A DNA stretch of 64,000 bases, taken from IMG/VR virus record IMGVR_UViG_3300027770_000025, positions 62,001 to 126,000 of that record. The stretch is one strand, 5' to 3'. Each line of letters opens with the position of its first letter. Position 1 is the stretch's first letter. The position numbers and the translations under genes are program-made. This document shows, in pieces, positions 37,420-50,975 of the stretch. The notes below the pieces were generated by a model that saw only the letters and a program-made list of their open reading frames with translations, was not told the DNA's origin and searched no databases.

Positions 37420-37667
37420 ATGAGACATATAAAACCATATCAGATATTCGAAGCCAGTGCAGCTGCACTTCAGGAACTTACACAAGAGCAGATCGGGTGG
37501 TTGGATAAATGTGCAGCTGGCAGATGGAAGCTTAATCCACTACAAGACTTATTGATGTGGATGGTGATTTCGATTGCTCGTCCAAAAGTCTAACAGATCT
37601 TAAAGGGATTAAGTTCGGGGATGCGAGTGTGATTTTGGAAACCAGGTCCAGGCGCGTAGGTGACTAG
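37420..37667 (+). pseudogene. Frameshifted, array-less remnant of the LRR family
   Basis: MRHIKPYQIFEASAAALQELTQEQIGWLDKC..W.LNP, then 1-nt frameshift near 37539; LIDVDGDFDC..LTDLKGIKFG continues in another frame; LRR array absent. Confidence 0.8.
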
Positions 37668-37716
37668 GACCACAAAAAAAGCCTGGAGGTCTCCAGGCTG
37701 TAATGATTCTTCTATA

Positions 37717-39568: not shown

Positions 39569-40150
39569 CTAAGCTTTGATATTGAAGTACGCTAGATCAG
39601 CAGAGGTTGCTTGATCGATTGGCATCACCTTGGATACCGGTGATCCTGGATGGAAGCTTCTAATAACACCATTTGGATCCTGCTTGTATTCTACTGCCAT
39701 AAGTCCAATAGCAGGTGCTGTGTAGCTGCTGAATGCTAGTGGTTTGCTGGCTTTGTCAGGATTTAGTCTGGTATAGGATGGGTATGCATCTGCGTAGGTT
39801 GCTGGACCCCATTTACCATCTTTGTATATGACCCAAATCTGTTTACCATTTTGTGTCTTGGATAACGATACCTTGTAACCCTTATCTAGTAGATATCCAT
39901 ATGACATCACCGAGTCCTGGTCATCCTGTGGTACGAACATTGATTTGGGATACCATGACTTTAACCCACTATCTTCTCCTCCTGTGTTGGCATGTGATGA
40001 CTTCCATCTCTTAGTCTCTCCTGCATCTGATAACAGATACTTAGATCCTTGTGAGGTCTCGAAGTATGTTGTGATAGGAGATAGAGATGGTGACACCAGC
40101 TTCTTTGTGCTGTTGCTCTCGTATAGATTATATGACTTGATGTGTCTCAT
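39569..40150 (-). CDS. CTS-like-tagged hypothetical protein
   Basis: MRHIKSYNLYE. Confidence 0.75.
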   Translation of the reverse strand: MRHIKSYNLYESNSTKKLVSPSLSPITTYFETSQGSKYLLSDAGETKRWKSSHANTGGEDSGLKSWYPKSMFVPQDDQDSVMSYGYLLDKGYKVSLSKTQNGKQIWVIYKDGKWGPATYADAYPSYTRLNPDKASKPLAFSSYTAPAIGLMAVEYKQDPNGVIRSFHPGSPVSKVMPIDQATSADLAYFNIKA

Positions 40151-40224
40151 GATCTATATATTCCGGTTAATAGTGCGGATATATAAAATATTAAAAACAG
40201 AACAATAAAAAACAGAACAATAAA

Positions 40225-40554
40225 ATGGAAAGAATTATTAAAACTTATGAGAGCTTCTCCTACTCTCCAGAAAACTTGGGAGACGAGATGGACATTATTA
40301 GGTTTGATGCTGGAGATGAGAAGAAGCTATCAGCTTTAGCAAAAGCTTTAGACCACAGCATTGACTTGGTTAATCCTGATTGGGGAAAGAAGTATCTGGA
40401 TAAAGGACCTATCTACGTTATCAACTCCAAATACTATTATCAACCTTCGAATGGCAAATTGGTTTCTGATGGATCGGGTAAAGGAATTCCTTTTGATGTT
40501 CTTGTTGATGAAGTTGGGGATCAGATCTTAACATTGGATTCAGGGGACATTTAA
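40225..40554 (+). CDS. CTS-like-tagged hypothetical protein
   Basis: MERIIKTYESF. Confidence 0.7.
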   Translation: MERIIKTYESFSYSPENLGDEMDIIRFDAGDEKKLSALAKALDHSIDLVNPDWGKKYLDKGPIYVINSKYYYQPSNGKLVSDGSGKGIPFDVLVDEVGDQILTLDSGDI

Positions 40555-40560
40555 TTTTTT

Positions 40561-41400
40561 ATGGCTAGAGTACTTAACTTTGATCAATATGTTTCGTTGA
40601 GCGAGGGAGTGAGAACTGGAACTAGAAAGGTGCCAGTAAAGCACTTCATACTTGATGGTGCTTCTTCAGCAGGTAAAAGTTCTGCGTTGAAGGATCTGAA
40701 TGATTCTTGGTGTGTTTTAGCGGTTGATTCTTTTTATAACGTTATGTTTGAAGAGCTAGGAAATGAGGATTTTGGAAATTCAGACAAACAAACTATCTCT
40801 GAAATATATCCCGGATGTCCATATGGGTACTCCAAACCAGATGATCCCAACTGGGAGAAAGCTGCAAGATGGTACATGGCTCAGGAAGCAATGTACGGGA
40901 AGATCCTGAATGAGGGCTTAAAAGACGCCACTGGAAAAGTGTTCGGAAAGCCAGCTGACAAGGATAAAGTTATCTATGACGATGTGGAGGGAACCATTAT
41001 GGACATGTTTGGTGCCGGGGATAGACCTAAATGGCTGCTGGTTCATGCACCGATCGATCACACAATAGCTAATGTTAGGAGAAGAGGAGATAGACCTTTG
41101 GATGGTGTTCTTAAAAATTCCTACTGCTTTAAGTACATGGCTCTACCAGAACCTGGTGGAATTGATCCGGATATGTCATGGAGTTCTGATGATATTAGGG
41201 CTTTGCTTCCTGGTGAAGAATGGGTAGAAGAATTCTTAACAAAGCTTGGTGTCTCTGATGATGGAAGAAGATATTGGATTTACACTAAACCCCAGCCACA
41301 AGGAAAATATGACGCGATTATTAATACAAGAGACAGTAGAGGAAATCAAAAGTCAATAGAGCAGATTGCAAAAGAGGCCAAAATAAAATTCGATCAATGA
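40561..41400 (+). CDS. P-loop small-molecule kinase (chloramphenicol phosphotransferase-like) with CTS-like tag
   Basis: ILDGASSAGKSS, VDSF, VIYDDV, RRGDR. Confidence 0.65.
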   Translation: MARVLNFDQYVSLSEGVRTGTRKVPVKHFILDGASSAGKSSALKDLNDSWCVLAVDSFYNVMFEELGNEDFGNSDKQTISEIYPGCPYGYSKPDDPNWEKAARWYMAQEAMYGKILNEGLKDATGKVFGKPADKDKVIYDDVEGTIMDMFGAGDRPKWLLVHAPIDHTIANVRRRGDRPLDGVLKNSYCFKYMALPEPGGIDPDMSWSSDDIRALLPGEEWVEEFLTKLGVSDDGRRYWIYTKPQPQGKYDAIINTRDSRGNQKSIEQIAKEAKIKFDQ

Positions 41401-42119: not shown

Positions 42120-42202
42120 ATCCACATTTGGTTATTATAATTTAAAGCAGACTTTGGTCTGCTTTTTTTATGGATATATAGAGCAGATAAAACGGGAGCA
42201 GC

Positions 42203-43081
42203 ATGAAGTACATTAAGCCATATCAGATATTCGAAGCCAGTGCATCAGCATCTGCACCAGCACTTACAGCGGAGCAGATAGAGTGGCTGGATAAATGTGT
42301 ACATGTAAGCTGGACTCTTAATCCACAAACAGGTCTTGTTGATGTGGATGGTGATTTCTATTGTGTAGATGAGGGTCTGACAGATTTTAAAGGGGTTAAG
42401 TTCGGGAAAGTGGGTGGGTATTTCAGTTGTGAGAAAAATGAGCTCACCTCACTGGTGGGAGCACCTAAGACCGTTAACGGTGATTTCTGGTGTCATGACA
42501 ATGAGCTCACCTCACTGGTGGGAGCACCTCAGACCGTTGGTGGGTATTTCGATTGTAGGGGCAATCAGCTCACCACACTGGTGGGAGCACCTCAGACGGT
42601 TGGTGGTTTCGATTGTGAAGGCAATCGTCTTACCTCACTTGATGGAGCACCACAAGAGGTTAAAGGGTATTTCGATTGTAGGGGCAATCAGCTCACCACA
42701 CTGGTGGGAGCACCTCAGAGCGTTGGTGGGGATTTCAATTGTGATAACAATCAGCTCACCACACTGGAGGGAGCACCTCAGACCGTTGGTGTGGATTTCT
42801 ATTGTAATGACAATGAGCTCACCACACTGGAGGGAGCACCTCAGACCGTTAAAGGGAGTTTCAATTGTGAGGGGAATCCAGTCTCTGAAAGCACTTTAAA
42901 AGCCATCTTTGCGCTAATGCGAAAAGGAATGGCTTATCAGCAGGCTCTAGAAAAACGCTGGCCGAAGATGAAAGATGTAGATAGGGTGCTAATGTATAAA
43001 CAAATGACTAATCTACCACCAGAAGAGATGAGAAAGTACAATGCGTTGGCTACCTATGCTAACATAAAGAGCTATTTATAA
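42203..43081 (+). CDS. 22-aa LRR protein 1 (7 GAP repeats), CTS-like tag
   Basis: Repeats xFxCxxNxLTSLxGAPQxVGG. Confidence 0.9.
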   Translation: MKYIKPYQIFEASASASAPALTAEQIEWLDKCVHVSWTLNPQTGLVDVDGDFYCVDEGLTDFKGVKFGKVGGYFSCEKNELTSLVGAPKTVNGDFWCHDNELTSLVGAPQTVGGYFDCRGNQLTTLVGAPQTVGGFDCEGNRLTSLDGAPQEVKGYFDCRGNQLTTLVGAPQSVGGDFNCDNNQLTTLEGAPQTVGVDFYCNDNELTTLEGAPQTVKGSFNCEGNPVSESTLKAIFALMRKGMAYQQALEKRWPKMKDVDRVLMYKQMTNLPPEEMRKYNALATYANIKSYL

Positions 43082-43095
43082 TTCACTATATCTCC

Positions 43096-43407
43096 TTAGA
43101 GTAGTCTTGAAGCTATCCTGTCCATGGCTTGGGCTAGCTCGTGATCCTTATCTGTGACCACATCTCCTGCGTCATGAGTTCTGAGCCAGCACTCCACCTC
43201 CTTATAGATGTTGGTCCATTTGGGATGGTGATCCATTTGGTTGCACACCTCTGCTACTTCGTTCATAAACTCCATGGCAACATTGAAATCTGCAAAAACG
43301 TATTTCTTGTACAGCGAGTTGTCGGCAGTAACCCACCCTTCTGTTTGAGTGATTGGCTTTAGTGTCTCCTGGATCTCAAACCCTCTATATTGCTGCAAGT
43401 GTCTCAT
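43096..43407 (-). CDS. phhB: Pterin-4a-carbinolamine dehydratase
   Basis: F.DF..AMEFMNEVA....QMDHHP.W.N.Y..V...L.THDAG.VT.KD..LA. Confidence 0.9.
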   Translation of the reverse strand: MRHLQQYRGFEIQETLKPITQTEGWVTADNSLYKKYVFADFNVAMEFMNEVAEVCNQMDHHPKWTNIYKEVECWLRTHDAGDVVTDKDHELAQAMDRIASRLL

Positions 43408-43523
43408 ACCGTTTGGGTGTATGTGTAGGTTTTTTTGAAATCAAACTTTAATATATACTAAAAACTAAATAAAAACTTACATATACACCTTGTTATGTGT
43501 TAGTAAAAAATAACTAACTAATT

Positions 43524-44000
43524 ATGAAATACCTAAAATTATTCGAAAATTTTATTTTGAATGAACTGACATCTTATCAACAAGCACCTGTCGAAGTAAA
43601 AGAATTTGCCGAGGGATTAAAATCACATTTAGAAGTAAATGGTTGCAGTGTTTTTGATGTTAAAGGACTATCTTTAGACGATGAAAGAAATCTAGTCTTT
43701 GATGAAAGACCCAAAGGAAAAAATATTATCTTTTCATTGAGTAATGAATTCAGTAACAAATACTTACCTGATGATGATTGTTTGAATGTTTATTACGAAA
43801 AGGGTAACGTTCAAGTAATTTCTTTGATTGTGGATTATTTGAAGGATTTTAATGAAAAAATAGGTAAAGCTACAAATGCTTCTGAAAGAACTGAAGGCTA
43901 TCGAAACGCGATGATAAATGATTATCTTATTTGGGATTTACTTGTCAAAAAAAGTGAAAAGCTTGTGAAGAACTACTCTGTTAAGTTCGTGGGTCGTTAA
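43524..44000 (+). CDS. CTS-like-tagged hypothetical protein
   Basis: MKYLKLFENFILNE. Confidence 0.7.
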   Translation: MKYLKLFENFILNELTSYQQAPVEVKEFAEGLKSHLEVNGCSVFDVKGLSLDDERNLVFDERPKGKNIIFSLSNEFSNKYLPDDDCLNVYYEKGNVQVISLIVDYLKDFNEKIGKATNASERTEGYRNAMINDYLIWDLLVKKSEKLVKNYSVKFVGR

Positions 44001-44173
44001 TTATTTTTTTATTACACATAACACTATATATCCTCTATTAGTTGCTCTATCTATAAGAGACGGAACATTATCTGCATCTATTTGGAGACCGGGCCTGGTT
44101 GTGGTAAAAGGCCGAAAAGGCCAGTTTTGAAATGCGATATATATAATAATTAAAATAATAAGAACAACCCAAT

Positions 44174-44647
44174 ATGAAAAAAGAAAAACTAAACGAATCA
44201 GCAGAAGCAGGTGCTATGTTTATTTCGCTACACCCTGATGACTATCACGGAGCGCCAGAGGTTGACACCGTATTTCCCTCTAGTATTCCTGGGGGGTTTT
44301 CCGGTGATGTGTTTCCGACAATTCCTAGCAAAGAAGAGGTTTTTAATGATTGGTTAGCAGCAGGATATAACGCTTTTGATACGGGCTGGGACGGTGATTT
44401 TGATAACCCGCATGAGGTAGAAGAGGGACAGAAGGAGACTTTTGAACTTTATGGCGATATGCCCCTTTATTATGCGACCTATATGATAGTTATGAATGAT
44501 GAACTAAATCCGCAAGAAATAATTGAGAATATAAATTATGATATACAGGAGGAATCTTATAATGGGAATAAGCTCGATCCTGATGATTTTGTTAAGCTTC
44601 TTAACGGTATACAGGGCATTATTGCTGCATATGTATTAACTAGATAA
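44174..44647 (+). CDS. Acidic late protein
   Basis: MKKEKLNES; GATATATA at 44136. Confidence 0.7.
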   Translation: MKKEKLNESAEAGAMFISLHPDDYHGAPEVDTVFPSSIPGGFSGDVFPTIPSKEEVFNDWLAAGYNAFDTGWDGDFDNPHEVEEGQKETFELYGDMPLYYATYMIVMNDELNPQEIIENINYDIQEESYNGNKLDPDDFVKLLNGIQGIIAAYVLTR

Positions 44648-44667
44648 TTATATAAATCTTAAATTTA

Positions 44668-45486
44668 ATGGAAAAAAAATTAAAATCTTTAGTTTTTAGA
44701 AATAAAACAGGAAGAAGGAGTCCATGGACTTGCAATTTTTATATTGGGTGTTCTAACTCATGCACATACTGCTGCTGTACGTATATTGTTAAACATTCAT
44801 GGTCATCTAGCGTTAAACTCATAAAGCACTTTATCAACGAATCGCATGCATTAGAGATTTTTGAAGAGGAGATAAAAGACAACCTAGCTTCATTACAGGA
44901 AAGGGGAAGACTTTTCTTCTCATTAACAACCGACGCAATGCTTCCCGAGACAAAAGAACTGACGTTTTCCGCTATGAGAATTTGTCATGATAATAATATT
45001 CCCTTTAAGGTTTTAACTAAATGTACAGATTGGGTAAATGGGGAATTCGTAAAAGAATTTGAGAATTCCGGAACAGTATGGGGTTTAGAACCTAAAATGG
45101 AACTTTTTGCTTTTGGCTTCTCCCTTACAGGTCATGATGAAATAGAGATTGGTGCAGGAACGAATGAGGATAGGGTAAAATCCCTTATTAAATTGAAAAA
45201 CCTCGGATTTAGAACGTTTATTAGTTTTGAACCTGTAATAGATTATGAATCCACTTTTTCAATAATGGAAAAATCCTATATGTACTGTGACTTCATGAGA
45301 ATAGGACTAATGAACGGGCCAACACGTGACAAGAATATAGATCGGGTAAAACTTCGTGGCTTCTTTGATCGTGTGAACGCTATGGTTAAATACGTTCCAG
45401 TTTATTGGGGGGATAGCATAATAACATATTTAGAAATAGATAGAGAAAATATGCCACAAAATTGTGTTATTGAAGAGATTTTCTAA
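44668..45486 (+). CDS. Radical SAM protein
   Basis: GCSNSCTYC (CxxxCxxC), LTK, SFEP. Confidence 0.8.
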   Translation: MEKKLKSLVFRNKTGRRSPWTCNFYIGCSNSCTYCCCTYIVKHSWSSSVKLIKHFINESHALEIFEEEIKDNLASLQERGRLFFSLTTDAMLPETKELTFSAMRICHDNNIPFKVLTKCTDWVNGEFVKEFENSGTVWGLEPKMELFAFGFSLTGHDEIEIGAGTNEDRVKSLIKLKNLGFRTFISFEPVIDYESTFSIMEKSYMYCDFMRIGLMNGPTRDKNIDRVKLRGFFDRVNAMVKYVPVYWGDSIITYLEIDRENMPQNCVIEEIF

Positions 45487-45489
45487 ATC

Positions 45490-46035
45490 GTGCATAGGGA
45501 TCTAATATTAGAACACGCAAAGAGATGGAGATCTATTGGGATCGATACTGTTTCTATTAAAGTTGAGGGAGAGCACAGATCAAAGAAGCTATACAGAAAA
45601 ACACTAAAGATAAGTGATGAAATATTGAATTCGCCTGATATGCTTTCCGAAGATTTTAATTTTCTTGGCATCTCACTCAGAAATTCAGGTATTTTTTGTC
45701 TTGATATAGAGGCGATTAATAATTCAGTTGATAATTTCTATTCTCTCCTGGCAGAAAGAGAAATAGATCCCAATTCTTTTTTAATGGAAACGAGCCTAAA
45801 TGGTGGACTTCATGCTTATTTCAGAACGGATGATTTGATAATAGAGAATAAACACTTTAATTTTCTGCATGGAATTCATTTTGATATATTAACCAGATTT
45901 AGAGTATTTACCTCGCCTTCAACCTTTAGCGGTAAGAAGTATGAATGGATAGGTACACATTTTGATCGCATCTCATCATTGAATCAGATTCCGAAATTTC
46001 CAGAAGAACTTCACGATCTTATATGTGATATATAA
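45490..46035 (+). CDS. Bifunctional primase/polymerase (Prim-Pol) N-terminal-like domain
   Basis: FCLDIE, ETSLNGGLHAYF, PS....YEW. Confidence 0.65.
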   Translation: MHRDLILEHAKRWRSIGIDTVSIKVEGEHRSKKLYRKTLKISDEILNSPDMLSEDFNFLGISLRNSGIFCLDIEAINNSVDNFYSLLAEREIDPNSFLMETSLNGGLHAYFRTDDLIIENKHFNFLHGIHFDILTRFRVFTSPSTFSGKKYEWIGTHFDRISSLNQIPKFPEELHDLICDI

Positions 46036-46061
46036 AGATGAAATAAAATACATTTAATTCA

Positions 46062-46304
46062 ATGAAAAATCTGATAAATTTTAAAAAATTTAGCTTAAAT
46101 GAGTCCGATCAAATCGAGAAATCTATTAATAACATTTCAGATTCTGCTCTTGATATTATTATAGATAAATGCGAGAGTGACGCACTTTTAGCTATAAAAG
46201 AAAATGTTCCTTATCTATATCAGGTGCTTTCAAAAAGATCACAATCTAGAGGAATAGACATTGATAAAATGGTTTCAGCAAAAGCTAAAATGAAATGGAT
46301 CTAG
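46062..46304 (+). CDS. Small CTS-like-tagged protein
   Basis: MKNLINFKKFSLNE. Confidence 0.7.
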   Translation: MKNLINFKKFSLNESDQIEKSINNISDSALDIIIDKCESDALLAIKENVPYLYQVLSKRSQSRGIDIDKMVSAKAKMKWI

Positions 46305-46390
46305 AATAGAGCACAAAGTTAATCAAAGCAGACATAAGTCTGCTTTTTTTGTGGTTTTATTTTTTTATCCCGTATAATTGACTTATCTTT

Positions 46391-46960
46391 ATGAAAAATT
46401 TAAAACTCAAAATAATGGAAAAATTAGATGGAATAAAAAAAGAAATGATTGATAGGCTTGGTCAAATATCTCCTATGCTTAGACGTGGAGATGAAAGAAG
46501 TAAAAAAATAGCAGGCATTGCAACACATTTGCATGCTTTGTCCTATATGGAGACAGGGGCAAGAAGAACCCGTTTACTTGAGGAGATATCTGATATCTAC
46601 AATGAAATGCAGGTAAAGTATAATCGTGAAATATACGAAGGATCAGGGGGAAAAATCGGATCAGGTAAAATGGTTGCTGCCACAGAAAAAGATCCAATAC
46701 ATGACATTGCAATAAAGAAAATATCAGGTATTGATGTAAATGGATTTAACACAATACAAATAAATATGGCTTTAATGCAGGACCCTATGTCCAGAATAGT
46801 ATTAGGGCAGTTTTACGGTGACGATAAAGCAGCAGACGAATTCTTTAATTTCGTATACCGATCTTTATGGACTTTGCTTCTTTGTTGCTACAGCAACAAG
46901 AGCTACGCAGAAAAAATAGAAAAGATTGTGTGCAAGTTTCCAGCACCTAGTTTAAACTAG
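46391..46960 (+). CDS. Hypothetical protein under an early-type promoter (true start probably 46415)
   Basis: ttttatttttttatcccg-N10-ttatcttta at 46356-46391. Confidence 0.65.
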   Translation: MKNLKLKIMEKLDGIKKEMIDRLGQISPMLRRGDERSKKIAGIATHLHALSYMETGARRTRLLEEISDIYNEMQVKYNREIYEGSGGKIGSGKMVAATEKDPIHDIAIKKISGIDVNGFNTIQINMALMQDPMSRIVLGQFYGDDKAADEFFNFVYRSLWTLLLCCYSNKSYAEKIEKIVCKFPAPSLN

Positions 46961-47022
46961 ATTTATGGTAATGTTACAAAAAAGCAGGAAATCACCTGCT
47001 TTTTTATGGATATATAATGGAC

Positions 47023-47472
47023 ATGAAGAATCTAAAGACCTATAGAATGTTTGAGAGTGTGATGGAGATGACTCAGTGGCGATTACTACAAACTTTCGAA
47101 GCATTTTCACCTTCTTTTCCAAAAAACAAACACATGAATTCTTTCTTCGGGCGGGAAGAATATAAAATAAAATTATTGACTACTATAGATGGAATTAAAG
47201 TTTATCTAATTAATTCTTCCATCTTAAGTCAAAAATTTCACGTGTGGAACACATATTTAGGTAGTCATCATTATGGTAAAAAAAGTTCTCATATTCCAGA
47301 GGATGAAATTTTTATATCTGATAAAACTCCCGAGAATGAAATTAAAAGAGTAATACTGCATGAGTATGTAGAAAGAGCTATAATGAAAGTTTTAGAAACA
47401 CAATATAATATGTCACCTGAACAAGCATGGGAAATAGCTCATTATTTTGTTAAGAATGATTTAGGTTTATAA
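47023..47472 (+). CDS. CTS-like-tagged protein, possible metal-binding HExxE motif
   Basis: MKNLKTYRMFESVME identical to next gene; ILHEYVE...AH. Confidence 0.7.
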   Translation: MKNLKTYRMFESVMEMTQWRLLQTFEAFSPSFPKNKHMNSFFGREEYKIKLLTTIDGIKVYLINSSILSQKFHVWNTYLGSHHYGKKSSHIPEDEIFISDKTPENEIKRVILHEYVERAIMKVLETQYNMSPEQAWEIAHYFVKNDLGL

Positions 47473-47489
47473 GGTAACCATATAAGAAG

Positions 47490-48548
47490 ATGAAGAATTT
47501 AAAGACCTATAGAATGTTTGAGAGTGTGATGGAGCCGACCCAGGAGCAGATCGGGTGGCTCGACAAATGTGTATATGGAAGCTGGAAGCTTAACACTTCT
47601 ACAGGGCTTGTAGATGTTGATGGGAATTTCAATTGTAACGAACAGGGTCTGACGGATCTTAAAGGTGTTAGATTCGGAGAAGTGAGCGAGGATTTCGATT
47701 GTGAAGACAATCGTCTCACCTCACTTGATGGAGCACCACAAGAGGTTAAAGGGAGTTTCAATTGTAATAGTAATCAGCTCACAAGTCTGGAGGGAGCACC
47801 TCAGGCTGTTAATGGGAGTTTCGATTGCCAGAATAATCAGCTCACAAGTCTGGTGGGAGCACCCCAGAAAGTTGGTGGGGCTTTCAGTTGTTATCGCAAT
47901 CGGCTCACCTCACTCGAGGGAGCACCTCAGACCGTTGGCGGGAGTTTCTATTGTAACGGCAATCAGCTCACAAGTCTTGAGGGAGCACCTCAGAGTGTTG
48001 ATGGTGATTTCGATTGTAGGAGCAATCAGCTCACCACCCTGGTGGGAGCAACTAAGACAGTTGGCAAGCATTTCATTTGTAGTCATAATCAGCTCACAAG
48101 TCTGGTGGGGGCACCTCAGAAAGTTGATGGGGATTTCACTTGTAAGAACAATGCTCTAACCTCACTGGTGGGAGCACCACAGACTGTTAATGAGTTTTTC
48201 AATTGTAGTGAGAATCAGCTCACAAGTCTTGAGGGAGCACCTCAGACCGTTGGTGGAAGTTTCTATTGTATAGATAATCAGCTCACAAGTCTTGAGGGAG
48301 CACCTCAGAAAGTTGGTGGTATTTTCCACTGTGAGGATAATCCAGTTACTGAGAAGACACTTAAAGAAATATTAGATTATATGGGAATGCGTAGATCCTA
48401 TCTAGATGTTGTTAAATCCCGATGGTACCTATTTCCCTTGGAGGATCAGGTGCTGTTATACAGACCTGATTTCGAGTGGATTGGAGCAGAAGAGAGAAGG
48501 AAGTTGGATGCTATGAAAACTTATACCAATATTAAAGGAATGATATAA
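47490..48548 (+). CDS. 22-aa LRR protein 2 (10 repeats), CTS-like tag
   Basis: Repeat pattern as in 42203. Confidence 0.9.
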   Translation: MKNLKTYRMFESVMEPTQEQIGWLDKCVYGSWKLNTSTGLVDVDGNFNCNEQGLTDLKGVRFGEVSEDFDCEDNRLTSLDGAPQEVKGSFNCNSNQLTSLEGAPQAVNGSFDCQNNQLTSLVGAPQKVGGAFSCYRNRLTSLEGAPQTVGGSFYCNGNQLTSLEGAPQSVDGDFDCRSNQLTTLVGATKTVGKHFICSHNQLTSLVGAPQKVDGDFTCKNNALTSLVGAPQTVNEFFNCSENQLTSLEGAPQTVGGSFYCIDNQLTSLEGAPQKVGGIFHCEDNPVTEKTLKEILDYMGMRRSYLDVVKSRWYLFPLEDQVLLYRPDFEWIGAEERRKLDAMKTYTNIKGMI

Positions 48549-48581
48549 TGATATATAAGACAATAAAAAAAACATAATAAA

Positions 48582-49262
48582 ATGAAAAACCTAAAAACGA
48601 TTACTATTTTCCTGTTTGCCACCTTATTAATAGCTGGGTGCTCAGACAGCGTACAAAAAGTGCAAACTGCCCAAGAGAACGAGGCTAAAGCCCTTAAAAT
48701 TCACGAAGGTGCTTTTGCTTTCTGTGGAGCATCTGCTGCAGTGCCTACAGGCAATAAGATCATTATTCAAGGCGTGGAGTTCGATGAAGGATGTGCTATC
48801 TGTCCAGTTCTAACAGGACCTTCCATCTCTAATCTAGACATGTATGGCAGTGGAGGTACTTGGGGAGATTTCGCAGTGGCGTCCAACTTTCAAACACCAG
48901 ACGGAACAGATAAAACAATCTGGAGCCTATTCTGGTACTTTGACACCACTACCACTATTCCTCAGTTCAACCCTGAAAGCAAGAAGTGGGAGTTATCTTC
49001 CCCAGTGAACAGATCATTTACAATTAACCTGGATTCACCAGCAACATCTGAGAGCAACATGTTTGCTATGCCTGGTGTGGTTTTTGATACCACTGAATCT
49101 GGAATTATCTTAGCTAAAGTTTATGGACCACTTAATGAAGCAGCAATTCCTTTGCGTAAAGCAGTAGCTGTTAAGAACGGGGAGACTTCAATAACTGCAG
49201 CAAAAGAAGGATTTCCCTACCCAGTAGGTACCCCAATCCCGACGATGCCAAAGAAAAAGTAA
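48582..49262 (+). CDS. Lipoprotein
   Basis: Signal peptide ending LLIAGC; GATATATA upstream. Confidence 0.75.
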   Translation: MKNLKTITIFLFATLLIAGCSDSVQKVQTAQENEAKALKIHEGAFAFCGASAAVPTGNKIIIQGVEFDEGCAICPVLTGPSISNLDMYGSGGTWGDFAVASNFQTPDGTDKTIWSLFWYFDTTTTIPQFNPESKKWELSSPVNRSFTINLDSPATSESNMFAMPGVVFDTTESGIILAKVYGPLNEAAIPLRKAVAVKNGETSITAAKEGFPYPVGTPIPTMPKKK

Positions 49263-49323
49263 ACACCACCAACATTAAATTAAAGCAGACAATTGTCTGC
49301 TTTTTTTGTGGATATATAAAATC

Positions 49324-50205
49324 ATGAAGCACGTTACCTCATACAACCTATTTGAATCAGAATCAGAACCAATCAGAAAGGTGTTCACCAGAGAGCAGCT
49401 TAGCTGGCTAGATAAATGCACAGAGAACTCCTGGAAATACAATCCATCTACAGGGCTTGTTGATGTGGATGGGGATTTCTATTGTAGCGGCCAGAATCTA
49501 CAAGATTTTAAAGGTGTCAGATTCGGGACAGTTGGAAGGGGTTTCAGTTGTAAGAATAATCAGCTCACCACACTGGAGGGAGCACCTCAGAGTGTTGGTG
49601 GGGATTTCAATTGTTATAATAATCAGCTCACCACACTGGAGGGAGCACCTCAGAGTGTTGGCAATAGTTTCAATTGTGATGACAATCAGCTCACCACACT
49701 AGTGGGAGCACCTCAGAGCGTTGGTGGGGGTTTCAGTTGTAAGAATAATCAGCTCACAAGTCTAATGGGAGCACCTCAGAGTGTTGGTGAGGATTTCGAT
49801 TGTGAGAATAATCAGCTCACGAGTCTTGAGGGAGCACCTCAGGCTGTTAATGGGCGTTTCAGTTGTAGGGATAATGAGCTCACCACACTAGTGGGAGCAC
49901 CTCAGAAAGTTAATGGGGCTTTCAGTTGTGTTGGCAATCAGCTCACGAGTCTGGTGGGAGCACCTCAAACGGTTGGTGAGATTTTCTATTGTGGTGGTAA
50001 TCCAGTCTCTGAATCAACTTTAAAAGTCATCTTTGCGCTAATTCGAAAAGGAATTGCTTATCAGCAGGCTCTAGAACAATACTGGCCGGAGATGGAAGAT
50101 GAAGATAGGGCGTTAATGTATAAACAAATGCCTAATCTACCACCAGAAGAAACAAGAAAATACAAGGCGTTGGCTAACTACAATAACATAAAGGGTTATT
50201 TATAA
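49324..50205 (+). CDS. 22-aa LRR protein 3 (7 repeats), CTS-like tag (start revised)
   Basis: MKHVTSYNLFE; repeats. Confidence 0.9.
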   Translation: MKHVTSYNLFESESEPIRKVFTREQLSWLDKCTENSWKYNPSTGLVDVDGDFYCSGQNLQDFKGVRFGTVGRGFSCKNNQLTTLEGAPQSVGGDFNCYNNQLTTLEGAPQSVGNSFNCDDNQLTTLVGAPQSVGGGFSCKNNQLTSLMGAPQSVGEDFDCENNQLTSLEGAPQAVNGRFSCRDNELTTLVGAPQKVNGAFSCVGNQLTSLVGAPQTVGEIFYCGGNPVSESTLKVIFALIRKGIAYQQALEQYWPEMEDEDRALMYKQMPNLPPEETRKYKALANYNNIKGYL

Positions 50206-50960
50206 TGAAGTACATTAAGCCATATCAGATATTCGAAGCCAATGCGGCAGCACCAGCAGCACTTACTGAGGAGCAGATCGAGTGGTTGGATAAATGTGCT
50301 AATCGAACATGGTCACTAAATCCACAGACTGGACTGGTTGATGTGGATTTGGATTTCAATTGTACCGGACAGGGACTTTCAGATTTTAAAGGAGTTAAGT
50401 TCGGGGTGGTTAATAGAAGTTTCTTTTGTCCCCGCAATTCCCTTACTTCCCTTATAGGAGCACCACAACGGGTTGGCGGGGATTTATATTGTAACGAAAA
50501 TGCACTCACCTCACTTGAGGGAGCACCACAACGGGTTGGAATGAGCTTAAATTGTAACAACAATTCACTCACCTCACTTATGGGAGCACCACGAGAGGTT
50601 GGCGGGAGTTTCTATTGTCACACCAATCTTCTAACCTCATTAGAGGGAGCACCCCAACGGGTTGGTGGGGATTTCACTTGTACTAACAATCTTCTCACCT
50701 CACTTGAGGGAGCACCAAAAAGTGTTTTCAGGGATTTCGGTTGTCATGGCAATCCAGTCTCAGAAAAAACATTAAAGAAGATATATGACAAAATGCAAAA
50801 GGGTACCAGTTATCTGGCTGCTGTGGAGAGTCTTTGGAGCGAGATTCCTCAGGACGATCAGGTTCTGCTTTATGCTGATGATTTCAAATGGGTAAGCCCA
50901 GAGCAGGGTAGAGGACTAGTAGCACTAAGGGCTTATCAGGCTCTAAGAGGCATGCTTTAG
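50205..50960 (+). CDS. 22-aa LRR protein 4 (5 repeats), CTS-like tag
   Basis: MKYIKPYQIFEA; repeats. Confidence 0.9.
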   Translation: MKYIKPYQIFEANAAAPAALTEEQIEWLDKCANRTWSLNPQTGLVDVDLDFNCTGQGLSDFKGVKFGVVNRSFFCPRNSLTSLIGAPQRVGGDLYCNENALTSLEGAPQRVGMSLNCNNNSLTSLMGAPREVGGSFYCHTNLLTSLEGAPQRVGGDFTCTNNLLTSLEGAPKSVFRDFGCHGNPVSEKTLKKIYDKMQKGTSYLAAVESLWSEIPQDDQVLLYADDFKWVSPEQGRGLVALRAYQALRGML

Positions 50961-50975
50961 CGGATATATAGAGTT

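What the first reader, a model, noticed from the sequence alone, without database searches (positions are those of the whole stretch)
42203..50960. Candidate new system: capsid-tagged, module-shuffling LRR repertoire resembling variable lymphocyte receptors
Four paralogues have the layout tag + N-cap + 7/10/7/5 repeats of 66 bp + C-cap. Framework DNA is nearly invariant even at synonymous sites (ggagcacc, aatcagctcac), while the x positions of xFxCxxN (predicted concave beta face) are hypervariable. By hand count 71 of 74 codons flanking the F end in T while positions 1-2 vary, i.e. change is almost entirely non-synonymous. A distinctive module (42607-42667) recurs at a different array position in another gene (47693-47753, 59/61 nt). 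Caps are mosaic: 42203 shares its first 37 nt with 50205 but its C-cap with 49324, while 47490 and 50205 share the other C-cap type. Inference: recombination generates diverse injected binders, e.g. against host defence proteins.
Basis: partly seen in the sequence, partly recalled or inferred. Interest (0 to 1): 0.85.

Follow-up and report, generated by a model that had tools for sequence, protein, structure and literature searches.

The report
Tagged LRR binder family in huge phage
A 349-kb freshwater phage with T4-type head genes carries five complete copies of a leucine-rich-repeat binding protein whose predicted binding face is hypervariable, and each copy starts with a short tag resembling the signal T4 uses to load proteins into its capsid, so they may be an injected binder repertoire, though packaging is not shown.

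Summary
Four genes in the window are paralogues: A 42203-43081, B 47490-48548, C 49324-50205 and D 50205-50960. A fifth copy lies elsewhere in the genome, and a broken remnant lies at 37420-37670. All share the layout of an 11-aa tag, an N-cap, 7/10/7/5 units, and a 70-aa helical C-domain. The units are cysteine-ladder LRRs; the best solved match is Listeria InlJ, and the fold resembles the IpaH/SspH1 LRR domains. The most variable columns are the canonical concave-face positions. I reproduced the 71/74 NNT count, the 59/61-nt shared module and the mosaic caps, and trees of the N-terminal and C-terminal parts conflict. The genome is a complete 348,582-bp phage with a Gp23-type capsid protein and an S77 prohead protease. 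The tag (MKYIKPYQIFE|AS) ends in the T4 protease motif L/I-x-E. It heads at least 16-20 otherwise unrelated ORFs, and a late-promoter-like motif precedes it that also precedes the protease and capsid-protein genes. The best reading is a germline multigene family of capsid-targeted cargo, comparable to T4 internal proteins, that diversifies by unit gain and loss, recombination and substitution. Packaging and injection are inferred. No VLR-like programmed assembly is seen, and a DGR is excluded.

The parts
42203..43081 (+). LRR paralogue A, 292 aa. It has the tag MKYIKPYQIFE, an Ala/Ser linker, an N-cap, 7 units of 21 aa (unit 3 has 20 aa), and a type-1 helical C-domain.
   Evidence: ORF and unit parsing. 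AF2 model with pLDDT 90.4 shows a disordered tag, an N-cap helix, the solenoid and a 4-helix C-domain. The profile matches InlJ at E 2.7e-22.
47490..48548 (+). LRR paralogue B, 352 aa, with tag MKNLKTYRMFE, 10 units and a type-2 C-domain.
   Evidence: Pfam LRR_4 scores 31.7 bits, above its cut-off of 27. Its closest relative, L015:7590-8645, also has 10 units.
49324..50205 (+). LRR paralogue C, 293 aa, with tag MKHVTSYNLFE, 7 units and a type-1 C-domain. Its stop codon overlaps the ATG of D.
   Evidence: Many homologues start at the same Met. The promoter-like motif lies at 49311-49319.
50205..50960 (+). LRR paralogue D, 251 aa. Its tag is identical in DNA to that of A for 37 nt. It has 5 units and a type-2 C-domain, making it a tag/C-domain mosaic.
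   Evidence: The combination of an 'a' tag with a type-2 C-domain is rare in the family, 2 of 69.
37420..37670 (+). Decayed sixth copy. The tag and start of the N-cap are intact, then a frameshift near 37540 and stops follow. It has no array and no C-domain. It keeps the same upstream cassette as A.
42607..42667 (+). Distinctive unit, subtype RLTSLDGAPQEVKG (unit A4 plus the FDC of A3). It recurs at 47693-47753 as the first unit of B. The one-codon deletion in A3 lies at its left edge.
   Evidence: 59/61 nt identical. The subtype occurs in 2 units among 144 homologues.
47023..47472 (+). Unrelated 149-aa ORF just upstream of B. It carries the same 15-codon tag (MKNLKTYRMFESVME), 44/45 nt identical to the start of B, then diverges completely.
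   Evidence: It has no Pfam family.
42144..42181 (+). Regulatory cassette upstream of A: a terminator-like hairpin AAAGCAGAC-N4-GTCTGCTTT, a T run, then GATATATAG. Similar cassettes lie at 46325-46346 and at 49282-49319 upstream of C.
47009..47017 (+). GATATATAA promoter-like motif 5 nt before the ATG of the 47023 ORF. B follows 17 nt after that ORF and has no motif of its own.
48582..49262 (+). Predicted lipoprotein gene of 226 aa (signal peptide plus Cys, LIAGCSDS) lying between B and C. It is not part of the family but is a conserved neighbour.
   Evidence: It has 140 relatives in viral contigs, and few of those loci have LRR genes beside them.

Best explanation
These genes are a germline multigene family of small phage proteins (26-37 kDa after tag removal).

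Architecture:
- The proteins consist of a cysteine-ladder LRR solenoid with 21-aa units of the InlJ type and a fold like the IpaH/SspH1 LRR domains.
- The solenoid sits between a conserved N-cap and a conserved 70-aa four-helix C-domain of unknown fold family.
- The concave-face positions x3, x5, x7, x8 and x10 of LxxLxLxxNxL are hypervariable, so each paralogue should bind a different ligand.

Tag and expression:
- Each protein starts with an 11-residue tag (M-K-x-[IV]-x-x-Y-x-[ILM]-F-E, followed by A or S).
- I read the tag as a capsid-targeting propeptide of the T4 type (T4 CTS: MKTYQEFIAE).
- The genes are probably transcribed from a late-type promoter, (G)ATATATA(A/G).

Proposed pathway:
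1. The protein is carried into the prohead core.
2. The S77 prohead protease cuts after [ILM]-[FY]-E and frees it.
3. It is delivered into the host with the DNA.
4. There it binds host proteins; defence proteins are the obvious guess, by analogy with T4 IPI*.

Diversification: diversity arises by ordinary evolutionary processes. These are gain and loss of units, exchange of units and of N- and C-terminal parts by homologous recombination within and between paralogues and co-infecting relatives, and substitutions concentrated at the binding face. Conserved framework DNA, tag DNA and hairpin-promoter cassettes could serve as the recombination sites.

Shown: the architecture, the predicted fold, the variability map, recombination, array-length variation, the T4-type head genes, sharing of the tag among unrelated ORFs, and sharing of the promoter-like motif.

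Inferred: late transcription, packaging, cleavage, injection and the targets.
For: LRR identity:
- The alignment profile matches InlJ (3bz5) at E 2.7e-22, and IpaH7.8, SspH1 and SlrP next.
- The AF2 model has pLDDT 90.4 and pTM 0.83.
- Foldseek's top hits are the SspH1 and IpaH LRR domains, probability 1.0, TM 0.5-0.6.

Variability map:
- Column entropies peak at the canonical binding positions.
- The same map holds in 103 units from 25 genes of other viral contigs.
- In the B versus L015_7590 comparison, 9/10 units differ at each of columns 1, 2, 14, 18 and 20, and 0/10 differ at seven of the eleven framework columns (3, 5, 6, 8, 10, 11 and 19).

Selection:
- In the unsaturated pair E versus L100_6001, dN at the hypervariable columns is 0.36, against dS of 0.13-0.29.
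- Among the genome's own units, hypervariable dN is 0.86 against framework dS of 0.34.

Recombination and turnover:
- E has 5 units and its relative has 8, behind an N-terminus that is identical over the first 29 residues.
- The A4 and B1 units match at 59/61 nt.
- N-part and C-part trees conflict, with AU p 0.032 and 1.7e-9.
- Synonymous codon signatures are genome-specific. Codon identity is 0.82 within a gene, 0.74 within a genome and 0.68 between genomes.

Capsid-tag reading:
- The genome has a Gp23 capsid protein and an S77 protease.
- T4 gp21 cuts after L/I-x-E, and T4 CTSs are 10-19 aa, with targeting set by residues 4 and 7 and processing by residues 8 and 10 (PMC9026906). The T4 CTS is MKTYQEFIAE (PMC8442874).
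- In this tag, Y7, F10 and E11 are the near-invariant residues.
- The tag is disordered in the model.
- The strict tag pattern occurs at 16 N-termini of 418 ORFs, against about 0.002 expected per protein. Tagged ORFs cluster at 97-134 kb of the genome.
- The protease ORF carries about 17 tandem [LIV]-A-E repeats.
- The capsid protein starts MKLINEQEIYET and has SLNE|SAG ahead of its Gp23 domain.
- The ATATATA[AG] motif precedes nearly all tagged ORFs and also the protease ORF, which is followed directly by the capsid-protein ORF.
- A 15-codon tag is duplicated at 44/45 nt on a neighbouring unrelated ORF.
- Tagged ORFans recur in related contigs.

The family appears restricted to phages: no relative was found in 185,579 prokaryote genomes.
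Against: - No direct evidence exists for packaging, cleavage or injection. No cultured relative with a virion proteome was found; the closest cultured hit, a Vibrio phage, shares only the repeat units and lacks the tag and both caps.
- The protease-tag complex prediction gave no answer.
- The mature LRR proteins are acidic, pI 4.7-5.3, whereas the T4 IPs are highly basic (PMC8442874).
- Similarity of the tag to the T4 CTS is too short to test statistically.
- Twenty to forty different cargo proteins would be many.
- Positive selection is not firmly shown. With the saturated cap dS of the B/L015 pair as yardstick, hypervariable dN is below dS. The E/L100 excess is borderline and depends on the units being orthologous.
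- The near-fixed third-position T at columns 18 and 20 is not explained by this model.
Confidence: 0.5

Rival explanations
1. The LRR family is the same, but the N-terminal motif is not a capsid-targeting signal. The proteins would act where they are made, late in infection in the cytoplasm. Alternatively they attach to the outside of the virion through the conserved C-domain and serve as adhesins, decoration proteins or accessory receptor binders, as internalins do for bacteria and Hoc does for T4.
For: - LRRs of this class are typically surface adhesins (InlJ is the best match).
- The proteins are acidic, unlike the T4 IPs.
- The C-domain is conserved across the family, as an anchoring domain would be.
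- The promoter-like motif fits any late or structural role.
- Packaging is unproven, and the complex prediction gave no answer.
Against: - The tag is N-terminus-specific and conserved at the amino-acid level with varying codons.
- It ends in the protease motif of a T4-type head and is shared by many unrelated ORFans, exactly as in T-even internal-protein loci (PMC3012670, PMC9026906).
- The proteins have no signal peptide and no tail-fibre or capsid-decoration domain.
- The C-domain matches no known anchoring fold.
Confidence: 0.3
2. This is a programmed, VLR-like diversification system. Functional genes would be assembled or rewritten during infection from LRR cassettes by a dedicated mechanism.
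For: - The LRR modules have variable concave faces.
- A unit is shared between two genes at different array positions.
- The caps are mosaic.
- Short-read contigs break and cross-join inside the arrays.
Against: - All five genes are complete and independently started. No cap-less donor cassettes were found; the own-genome search found only the five genes, one decayed remnant and two weak partial matches.
- Contigs of the same phage from other lakes and years are collinear with the window over the covered parts of B and C (records 25, 21 and 4).
- The cross-joins have short sides of 25-51 nt and are expected from shared k-mers.
- Tag type and C-domain type are mostly linked across the family, so exchange is occasional.
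Confidence: 0.03
3. Hypermutation by a diversity-generating retroelement produces the NNT pattern.
For: An invariant third base with variable first and second bases at binding-site codons resembles AAY-templated DGR variation.
Against: - The complete genome has no reverse transcriptase.
- Many framework adenines are invariant (AAT, CAG, GCA, GGA), so the variation is not adenine-specific.
- The pattern occurs in every unit of about 30 genes, not in one variable region next to a template.
Confidence: 0.01

Closest known systems
Listeria internalin J (InlJ, PDB 3bz5) cysteine-ladder LRR
   Same: Both have a 21-residue unit with Cys in place of the sixth-position Leu (xFxCxxNxLTxL). It is the best sequence match among solved structures, E 2.7e-22.
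   Different: InlJ is a bacterial surface protein with a signal peptide and a cell-wall anchor. The phage proteins have the GAPQxV segment, an N-terminal tag, their own N-cap, and a 70-aa helical C-domain with no structural match. The family was not found in prokaryote genomes.
LRR domains of the type III secreted effectors IpaH, SspH1, SlrP and YopM
   Same: These are the nearest folds by Foldseek. They are also short-unit LRRs that serve as the target-recognition part of proteins delivered into another cell.
   Different: Those effectors carry a NEL E3-ligase domain or act as scaffolds, and they are delivered by a secretion system into eukaryotic cells. Here there is no catalytic domain, and delivery, if any, would be by phage ejection into a bacterium.
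T4 internal proteins (IPI, IPII, IPIII, Alt) and their capsid targeting sequence
   Same: Both have a short N-terminal propeptide shared by otherwise unrelated proteins. It ends in L/I-x-E in a phage with a Gp23-type capsid and an S77 protease. The genes sit in a variable region rich in ORFans (PMC9026906, PMC3012670).
   Different: The sequence is only loosely alike (MKTYQEFIAE versus MKYIKPYQIFE). The proteins are acidic rather than basic. The number of tagged ORFs, 20 or more, is far larger. Packaging is untested.
Hyperplastic regions and PeSL cassettes of T4-type phages (Arbiol et al. 2010, PMC2839356)
   Same: Small hairpin-plus-promoter cassettes flank ORFans in a highly variable genome region and are plausible recombination sites.
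   Different: The promoter-like element here resembles a late-type -10 box, (G)ATATATA(A/G), not a sigma-70 early promoter. Mini-circles and exchange at the cassettes were not tested.
Lamprey and hagfish variable lymphocyte receptors
   Same: Both are LRR solenoids with caps and hypervariable concave-face residues. A hagfish VLR appears far down the fold list, rank 35, E 0.11.
   Different: VLRs are assembled somatically from donor cassettes into an incomplete germline gene. Here all genes are complete germline copies, and there is no sign of programmed assembly.

Membership tests
Leucine-rich repeat proteins, bacterial short-unit / InlJ cysteine-ladder class | Tandem units carrying the LxxLxLxxNxL core | tested here: met
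   Pfam LRR_4 scores 31.7 bits on B, above its cut-off of 27; the other three genes are below it. The family profile matches InlJ at E 2.7e-22 and IpaH7.8 at 7e-16.
Leucine-rich repeat proteins, bacterial short-unit / InlJ cysteine-ladder class | 21-residue period with Cys at the sixth core position | tested here: met
   The period is 63 bp / 21 aa. Cys is present in 34/34 units. The HMMER alignment places it on the Cys of InlJ.
Leucine-rich repeat proteins, bacterial short-unit / InlJ cysteine-ladder class | Curved solenoid fold with capping elements | tested here: met
   The AF2 model has pLDDT 90.4 and shows an N-cap helix plus a regular solenoid. Foldseek gives probability 1.0 to the SspH1 and IpaH LRR domains. 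This is a prediction, not a solved structure.
T4-type capsid-targeted internal (ejected) proteins | The phage builds a T4-type prohead (Gp23 capsid protein, S77 gp21-like protease) | tested here: met
   PF07068 scores 138 bits. PF03420 scores 31-33 bits, above its cut-off.
T4-type capsid-targeted internal (ejected) proteins | An N-terminal propeptide of 10-19 aa ending in the protease motif L/I-x-E and shared by unrelated proteins | tested here: met
   The 11-aa tags end in I-F-E, M-F-E or L-F-E and are followed by A or S. The strict pattern occurs at 16 N-termini of 418 ORFs, against about 0.002 expected per protein. The motif definition is from PMC9026906.
T4-type capsid-targeted internal (ejected) proteins | Homology of the tag to the T4 CTS | tested here: inconclusive
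   MKTYQEFIAE (PMC8442874) and MKYIKPYQIFE share M-K, Y-Q-x-F and a terminal E. The sequences are too short for a statistical test.
T4-type capsid-targeted internal (ejected) proteins | Cleavage by the prohead protease, presence inside the head, ejection into the host | not testable with these tools
   The only attempt, a protease-tag complex prediction, returned 'no answer'.
VLR-like programmed LRR assembly | An incomplete target gene plus banks of cap-less donor cassettes | tested here: not met
   The own-genome search finds five complete genes, one decayed remnant and two weak partial matches, and no cassette banks.
VLR-like programmed LRR assembly | Many alternative arrays at one locus within a population | tested here: inconclusive
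   Short-read contigs from four runs are collinear where they cover B and C, but they fragment inside the arrays. The cross-joins have short sides. Long reads are needed.
Diversity-generating retroelement target | A reverse transcriptase and a template repeat, with variation only at template adenines | tested here: not met
   PF00078 has no match in the complete genome. Framework adenines are invariant.

The most novel reading that the evidence does not exclude
A clade of huge freshwater phages, related through its capsid protein to Lak-type megaphages and probably infecting Bacteroidota, uses a T4-like capsid-targeting tag to load dozens of ORFan proteins into the head. Among that cargo is an expanding, recombining repertoire of LRR binders injected with the DNA to neutralise host defence proteins. 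That would make it a phage counterpart of the LRR effectors of type III secretion systems. On this reading the conserved framework and tag DNA are kept alike because they are the substrate for recombination.
Probability: 0.3. Interest if true: 0.8.

Novelty: new variant of a known kind. Interest (0 to 1): 0.6.

Why it matters
More than 4,000 protein clusters in metagenomes belong to this family, all labelled hypothetical. I found no paper describing it. If the tag is a capsid-targeting signal, the cargo of a whole clade of uncultured huge phages could be read straight from sequence. The LRR paralogues would then be a ready-made set of natural binders against bacterial proteins, probably immune proteins. 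It would also show that internal proteins with a CTS, known from T-even phages, extend to distant T4-type megaphages and have been coupled to a repeat scaffold suited to rapid change of specificity.

Tried and rejected
- A megablast of the whole region against GenBank phages found no match.
- A PADLOC or anti-defence scan was not run. Pfam and PHROGs give only LRR_4 and unknown-function phrogs.
- A DGR is rejected: the genome has no RT.
- The protease-tag complex prediction gave a score of 0.00, 'no answer', and counts neither for nor against.
- The C-domain alone has no significant match in PDB or AFDB clusters, and the ESM Atlas feature search scored below the useful range.
- Ten tagged or neighbouring ORFs were scanned against Pfam. 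None matched above its cut-off; there was only a weak P-loop kinase hint at 40561-41400.
- I tried four explanations for the third-position T. Codon bias with next-base context, avoidance of CTTC or CTGT, a DGR, and an overlapping reading frame (open only in A, B and part of C) all fail to explain it.
- Laying contigs of four metagenome runs confirmed that the phage recurs in lakes from 2017 to 2022. It could not resolve array variation, because short-read contigs break in the repeats.
- The prokaryote genome scan found no relative.
- The conserved lipoprotein neighbour was a poor synteny anchor: of 80 loci fetched, only 3 had LRR genes nearby.

Full report
**What the window is.** The window is bases 62001-126000 of a single 348,582-bp viral contig that CheckV rates complete, with 36% G+C.
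- The genome encodes a Gp23-type major capsid protein (PF07068, 138 bits) and a gp21-type S77 prohead protease (PF03420).
- The capsid protein's nearest named relatives are uncultured huge phages and the Prevotella Lak megaphages, at about 44% identity. Cyanomyoviruses are more distant.
- The same sequence is held by freshwater and lake metagenomes from 2017 to 2022.
- So this is a huge freshwater phage with a T4-type head. A Bacteroidota host is only an inference from the Lak kinship.

**Checking the observation.** The four ORFs are real paralogues.
- Each has an 11-residue tag, a short Ala/Ser-rich linker, and an N-cap that itself contains two degenerate repeats. Then come 7, 10, 7 and 5 canonical units, and a C-terminal part of about 70 residues.
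- The unit is 21 aa, or 63 bp, not 66 bp. Its consensus is xxNxLTSLxGAPQxVxGxFxC.
- A fifth complete copy with 5 units lies at genome 214194-214940 on the minus strand. A decayed copy at window 37420-37670 keeps the tag and the start of the N-cap, then has a frameshift and stops, with no array.
71 of 74 codons flanking the Phe end in T. 42607-42667 matches 47693-47753 at 59/61 nt. A and D share their first 37 nt, while A groups with C and E in the C-terminal part (84-86% nt) and D groups, loosely, with B.

**Conservation and variability.** Framework columns are invariant in protein and use codons that are rare in this genome. CTC is used in 30/34 units against 5% of Leu codons genome-wide, GGG in 18/23 against 12%, and TTC in 32/32 against 37%.
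- The framework is not frozen, however. Nei-Gojobori dS among units is 0.26-0.36.
- The highest entropies fall on columns 1, 2, 18 and 20, followed by 14 and 4.
- Using the HMMER alignment to InlJ, columns 18, 20, 1, 2 and 4 correspond to x3, x5, x7, x8 and x10 of LxxLxLxxNxL. Established LRR structural knowledge places these positions on the concave face and ascending loop that contact ligands.
- The same map, and largely the same framework codons, recur in 103 units from 25 genes of eight other viral contigs.

**What the proteins are.**
- Pfam sees LRR_4 above its cut-off only in B, and PHROGs gives only unknown-function families.
- A profile of 28 family members matches Listeria internalin J at E 2.7e-22, then the LRR domains of IpaH7.8, SspH1 and SlrP.
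- AlphaFold2 on that alignment gives a confident model (pLDDT 90.4, pTM 0.83). Residues 1-20 are disordered. Then come a capping helix (23-32), a regular solenoid, and four helices at 229-291.
- Foldseek's best PDB matches are the SspH1 and IpaH LRR domains.
- The C-terminal domain was modelled alone (pLDDT 87). It has no significant match in PDB or AFDB clusters.
- The mature proteins are acidic, pI 4.7-5.3.

**How large the family is.**
- One search returned more than 4,074 clusters at E <= 1e-5 from a capped candidate list, all unnamed. Lengths step by about 21 aa, with 3-9 units among the 120 best hits.
- Nearly all of them begin with the same tag.
- Relatives sit in tandem clusters in other large viral contigs; six in a row lie next to the lipoprotein homologue in L015.
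- The closest cultured hit, Vibrio phage VB_VaC_SRILMA, shares only the repeat units, without the tag or caps.
- No relative was found in 185,579 prokaryote genomes.

**How the family diversifies.**
- Unit number changes over short distances. E and its relative in L100 are identical over the first 29 residues and have dS of 0.13-0.29 in the caps, yet carry 5 versus 8 units.
- Nearest-neighbour units are often in another gene at another array position (A6-E1 92%, A5-C1 90%) or two units away in the same gene (A3-A5 93%).
- The A4/B1 subtype is almost absent from other family members. Its presence at position 4 of A and position 1 of B therefore points to an exchange within this genome. The one-codon deletion in A3 lies exactly at the left edge of the shared tract.
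- A tree of tag plus N-cap DNA places B among genes with type-1 C-domains. Holding the type-2 genes together is rejected (AU p 0.032). The C-domain data reject the N-part clade (p 1.7e-9, though that group was named after seeing the tree).
- Across 149 family members, tag type and C-domain type are mostly linked, so such exchanges are occasional.
- Synonymous sites carry genome-specific signatures. Column 3 is AAT in 33/33 units here but AAC in 25/35 in contig c1. Column 12 is mostly CCT here and CCA there. Codon identity falls from 0.82 within a gene to 0.74 within a genome and 0.68 between genomes. This is the pattern expected of concerted evolution.
- In the B/L015_7590 pair, synonymous sites of the caps are saturated while framework dS is 0.72. 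The repeat framework is therefore kept more alike than the rest of the gene.

**Whether there is positive selection.** The evidence is suggestive, not decisive.
- Among the genome's own units, hypervariable dN (0.86) exceeds framework dS (0.34).
- In the unsaturated E/L100 pair, hypervariable dN (0.36) exceeds dS (0.13-0.29).
- Against this, the B/L015 pair is saturated, unit orthology is uncertain, and NG86 is crude.
- One feature remains unexplained. The third-position T at columns 18 and 20 is retained family-wide (97/103 and 78/103), while other synonymous sites drift. Codon bias with context, tetranucleotide avoidance, a DGR and an overlapping frame do not account for it.

**The tag.**
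- T4 internal proteins carry a 10-residue capsid targeting sequence, MKTYQEFIAE (PMC8442874).
- In T4, targeting depends mainly on residues 4 and 7, and processing on residues 8 and 10. gp21 cuts after L/I-x-E (PMC9026906).
- T-even internal proteins are otherwise unrelated and share only the CTS (PMC3012670).
- Here the tags read MKYIKPYQIFE|AS, MKNLKTYRMFE|SV and MKHVTSYNLFE|SE. Y7, F10 and E11 are nearly invariant across the family, and the codons vary while the residues stay the same.
- A strict pattern finds 16 N-terminal occurrences in 418 ORFs, against about 0.002 expected per protein from internal matches. A looser pattern adds the MKxIKLFExF variant. The tagged ORFs cluster at 97-134 kb of the genome.
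- Tagged ORFs have no Pfam family and recur in related contigs.
- The ORF just upstream of B carries the first 15 codons of B at 44/45 nt and is otherwise unrelated.
- The protease ORF is fused to about 17 tandem 14-aa repeats, each containing [LIV]-A-E. That looks like a self-destructing scaffold with the T4 cleavage motif.
- The capsid protein begins with a tag-like MKLINEQEIYET and has SLNE|SAG ahead of its Gp23 domain.
- A motif (G)ATATATA(A/G) lies 3-25 nt before the ATG of nearly all tagged ORFs. It also precedes the protease ORF, which is followed directly by the capsid-protein ORF, and several very large ORFs. It resembles the T4 late promoter TATAAATA (from my own knowledge of T4), and its closeness to the ATG implies very short leaders.
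- Hairpin terminators of one sequence family precede the motif upstream of A and C, and a third lies at 46325 without an adjacent full motif. These recall the hairpin-promoter cassettes that mediate shuffling in T4-type hyperplastic regions (PMC2839356).

**Weighing the capsid-tag reading.** All of this fits a capsid-targeting propeptide, but none of it is direct evidence.
- The one in-silico test I could run, a protease-tag complex prediction, returned no answer.
- The acidity of the LRR proteins differs from the T4 IPs.

**Population data.** Contigs from four independent lake runs match the flanking genes at 99% or more.
- Where they cover the arrays they keep the window's unit order: units B1-B4 in X9 (record 25), C3-C7 in X6 (record 21), and the B/C flanks in X2 (record 4).
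- The arrays fragment the short-read assemblies and attract many 90-95% contigs from other family members.
- The cross-joins have short sides and are expected from shared k-mers.
- So there is no sign of rapid rearrangement, though the data cannot exclude it.

**Verdict.**
- The region holds a real and very widespread but undescribed phage family of cysteine-ladder LRR proteins with a hypervariable binding face. The family evolves by unit turnover, recombination and substitution.
- The capsid-tag idea is the most interesting part and is circumstantially well supported by the T4-type head genes, the cleavage motif, sharing of the tag and the common promoter-like motif.
- The VLR analogy and the label 'new system' are not supported. 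The nearest known kind is the T-even internal-protein/CTS arrangement in a hyperplastic region, here coupled to an LRR scaffold.

Noticed in passing
outside the window: genome 302345-304309, minus strand (L105:1946-3910:-): The S77 prohead protease is fused to about 17 tandem 14-aa repeats ([SK]EY[LIV]AE[NKS][LV][DN]K.I.Y). Each carries a [LIV]-A-E motif like the T4 gp21 cleavage site. It looks like a protease-scaffold fusion that would be cut to pieces.
   Followed up: partly
whole genome; in the window e.g. 42173-42181, 47009-47017, 48550-48558, 49311-49319, 50963-50971: The motif (G)ATATATA(A/G) lies upstream of 74 ORFs, for 22 of them only 3-6 nt before the ATG. These include the protease ORF, which is followed directly by the capsid-protein ORF, and several very large ORFs. 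It is probably a late promoter, with near-leaderless transcripts.
   Followed up: partly
window 35700-60000 (genome 97-134 kb): A cluster of ORFans of 57-569 aa on both strands all begin with the MKxIKxFxxFE-type tag. None has a Pfam family. The same kind of tagged ORFan recurs in related viral contigs.
   Followed up: partly
window 48582-49262 (+): A predicted lipoprotein (MKNLKTITIFLFATLLIAGCSDS...) is conserved at 65-78% identity in at least 140 viral contigs, but rarely sits next to LRR genes. Its function is unknown; superinfection exclusion is a guess.
   Followed up: partly
window 42144-42165, 46325-46346, 49282-49303: Three copies of one terminator-like hairpin, AAAGCAGAC-N4-GTCTGCTTT followed by a T run. 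The first and third lie directly upstream of a promoter-like motif. They may be recombination cassettes like T4 PeSLs.
   Followed up: no
unit columns 18 and 20 of all LRR genes, here and in L015, L095-L104: The third codon position is almost always T while positions 1-2 vary freely, family-wide. Codon bias, sequence context, motif avoidance, a DGR and an overlapping frame do not explain it.
   Followed up: yes
window 44668-45486 (+): A 272-aa ORF carries a CxxxCxxC motif (GCSNSCTYC) near its N-terminus, as radical-SAM enzymes do. I did not search it against any library.
   Followed up: no
window 40193-40225: A perfect 15-bp tandem repeat (AAAAACAGAACAATA, 2.2 copies) lies in the divergent intergenic region between two tagged ORFs, 39569-40150 (-) and 40225-40554 (+).
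   Followed up: no
window 42414-42899 and 47701-48159 (+), 47507-47761 and 50225-50572 (-): Long alternative-frame and antisense ORFs run through the arrays. They arise because a stop-free 63-bp unit is repeated. They are not open in all paralogues and are most likely not genes.
   Followed up: partly
phage records LR756501/LR756503 (735 kb) and PP083314/PP083315 (Vibrio phages): The same 21-aa GAPQ-type LRR unit occurs at 15 places in the largest known uncultured phage genome. It also occurs in a cultured Vibrio jumbo phage protein that lacks the tag and both caps.
   Followed up: partly
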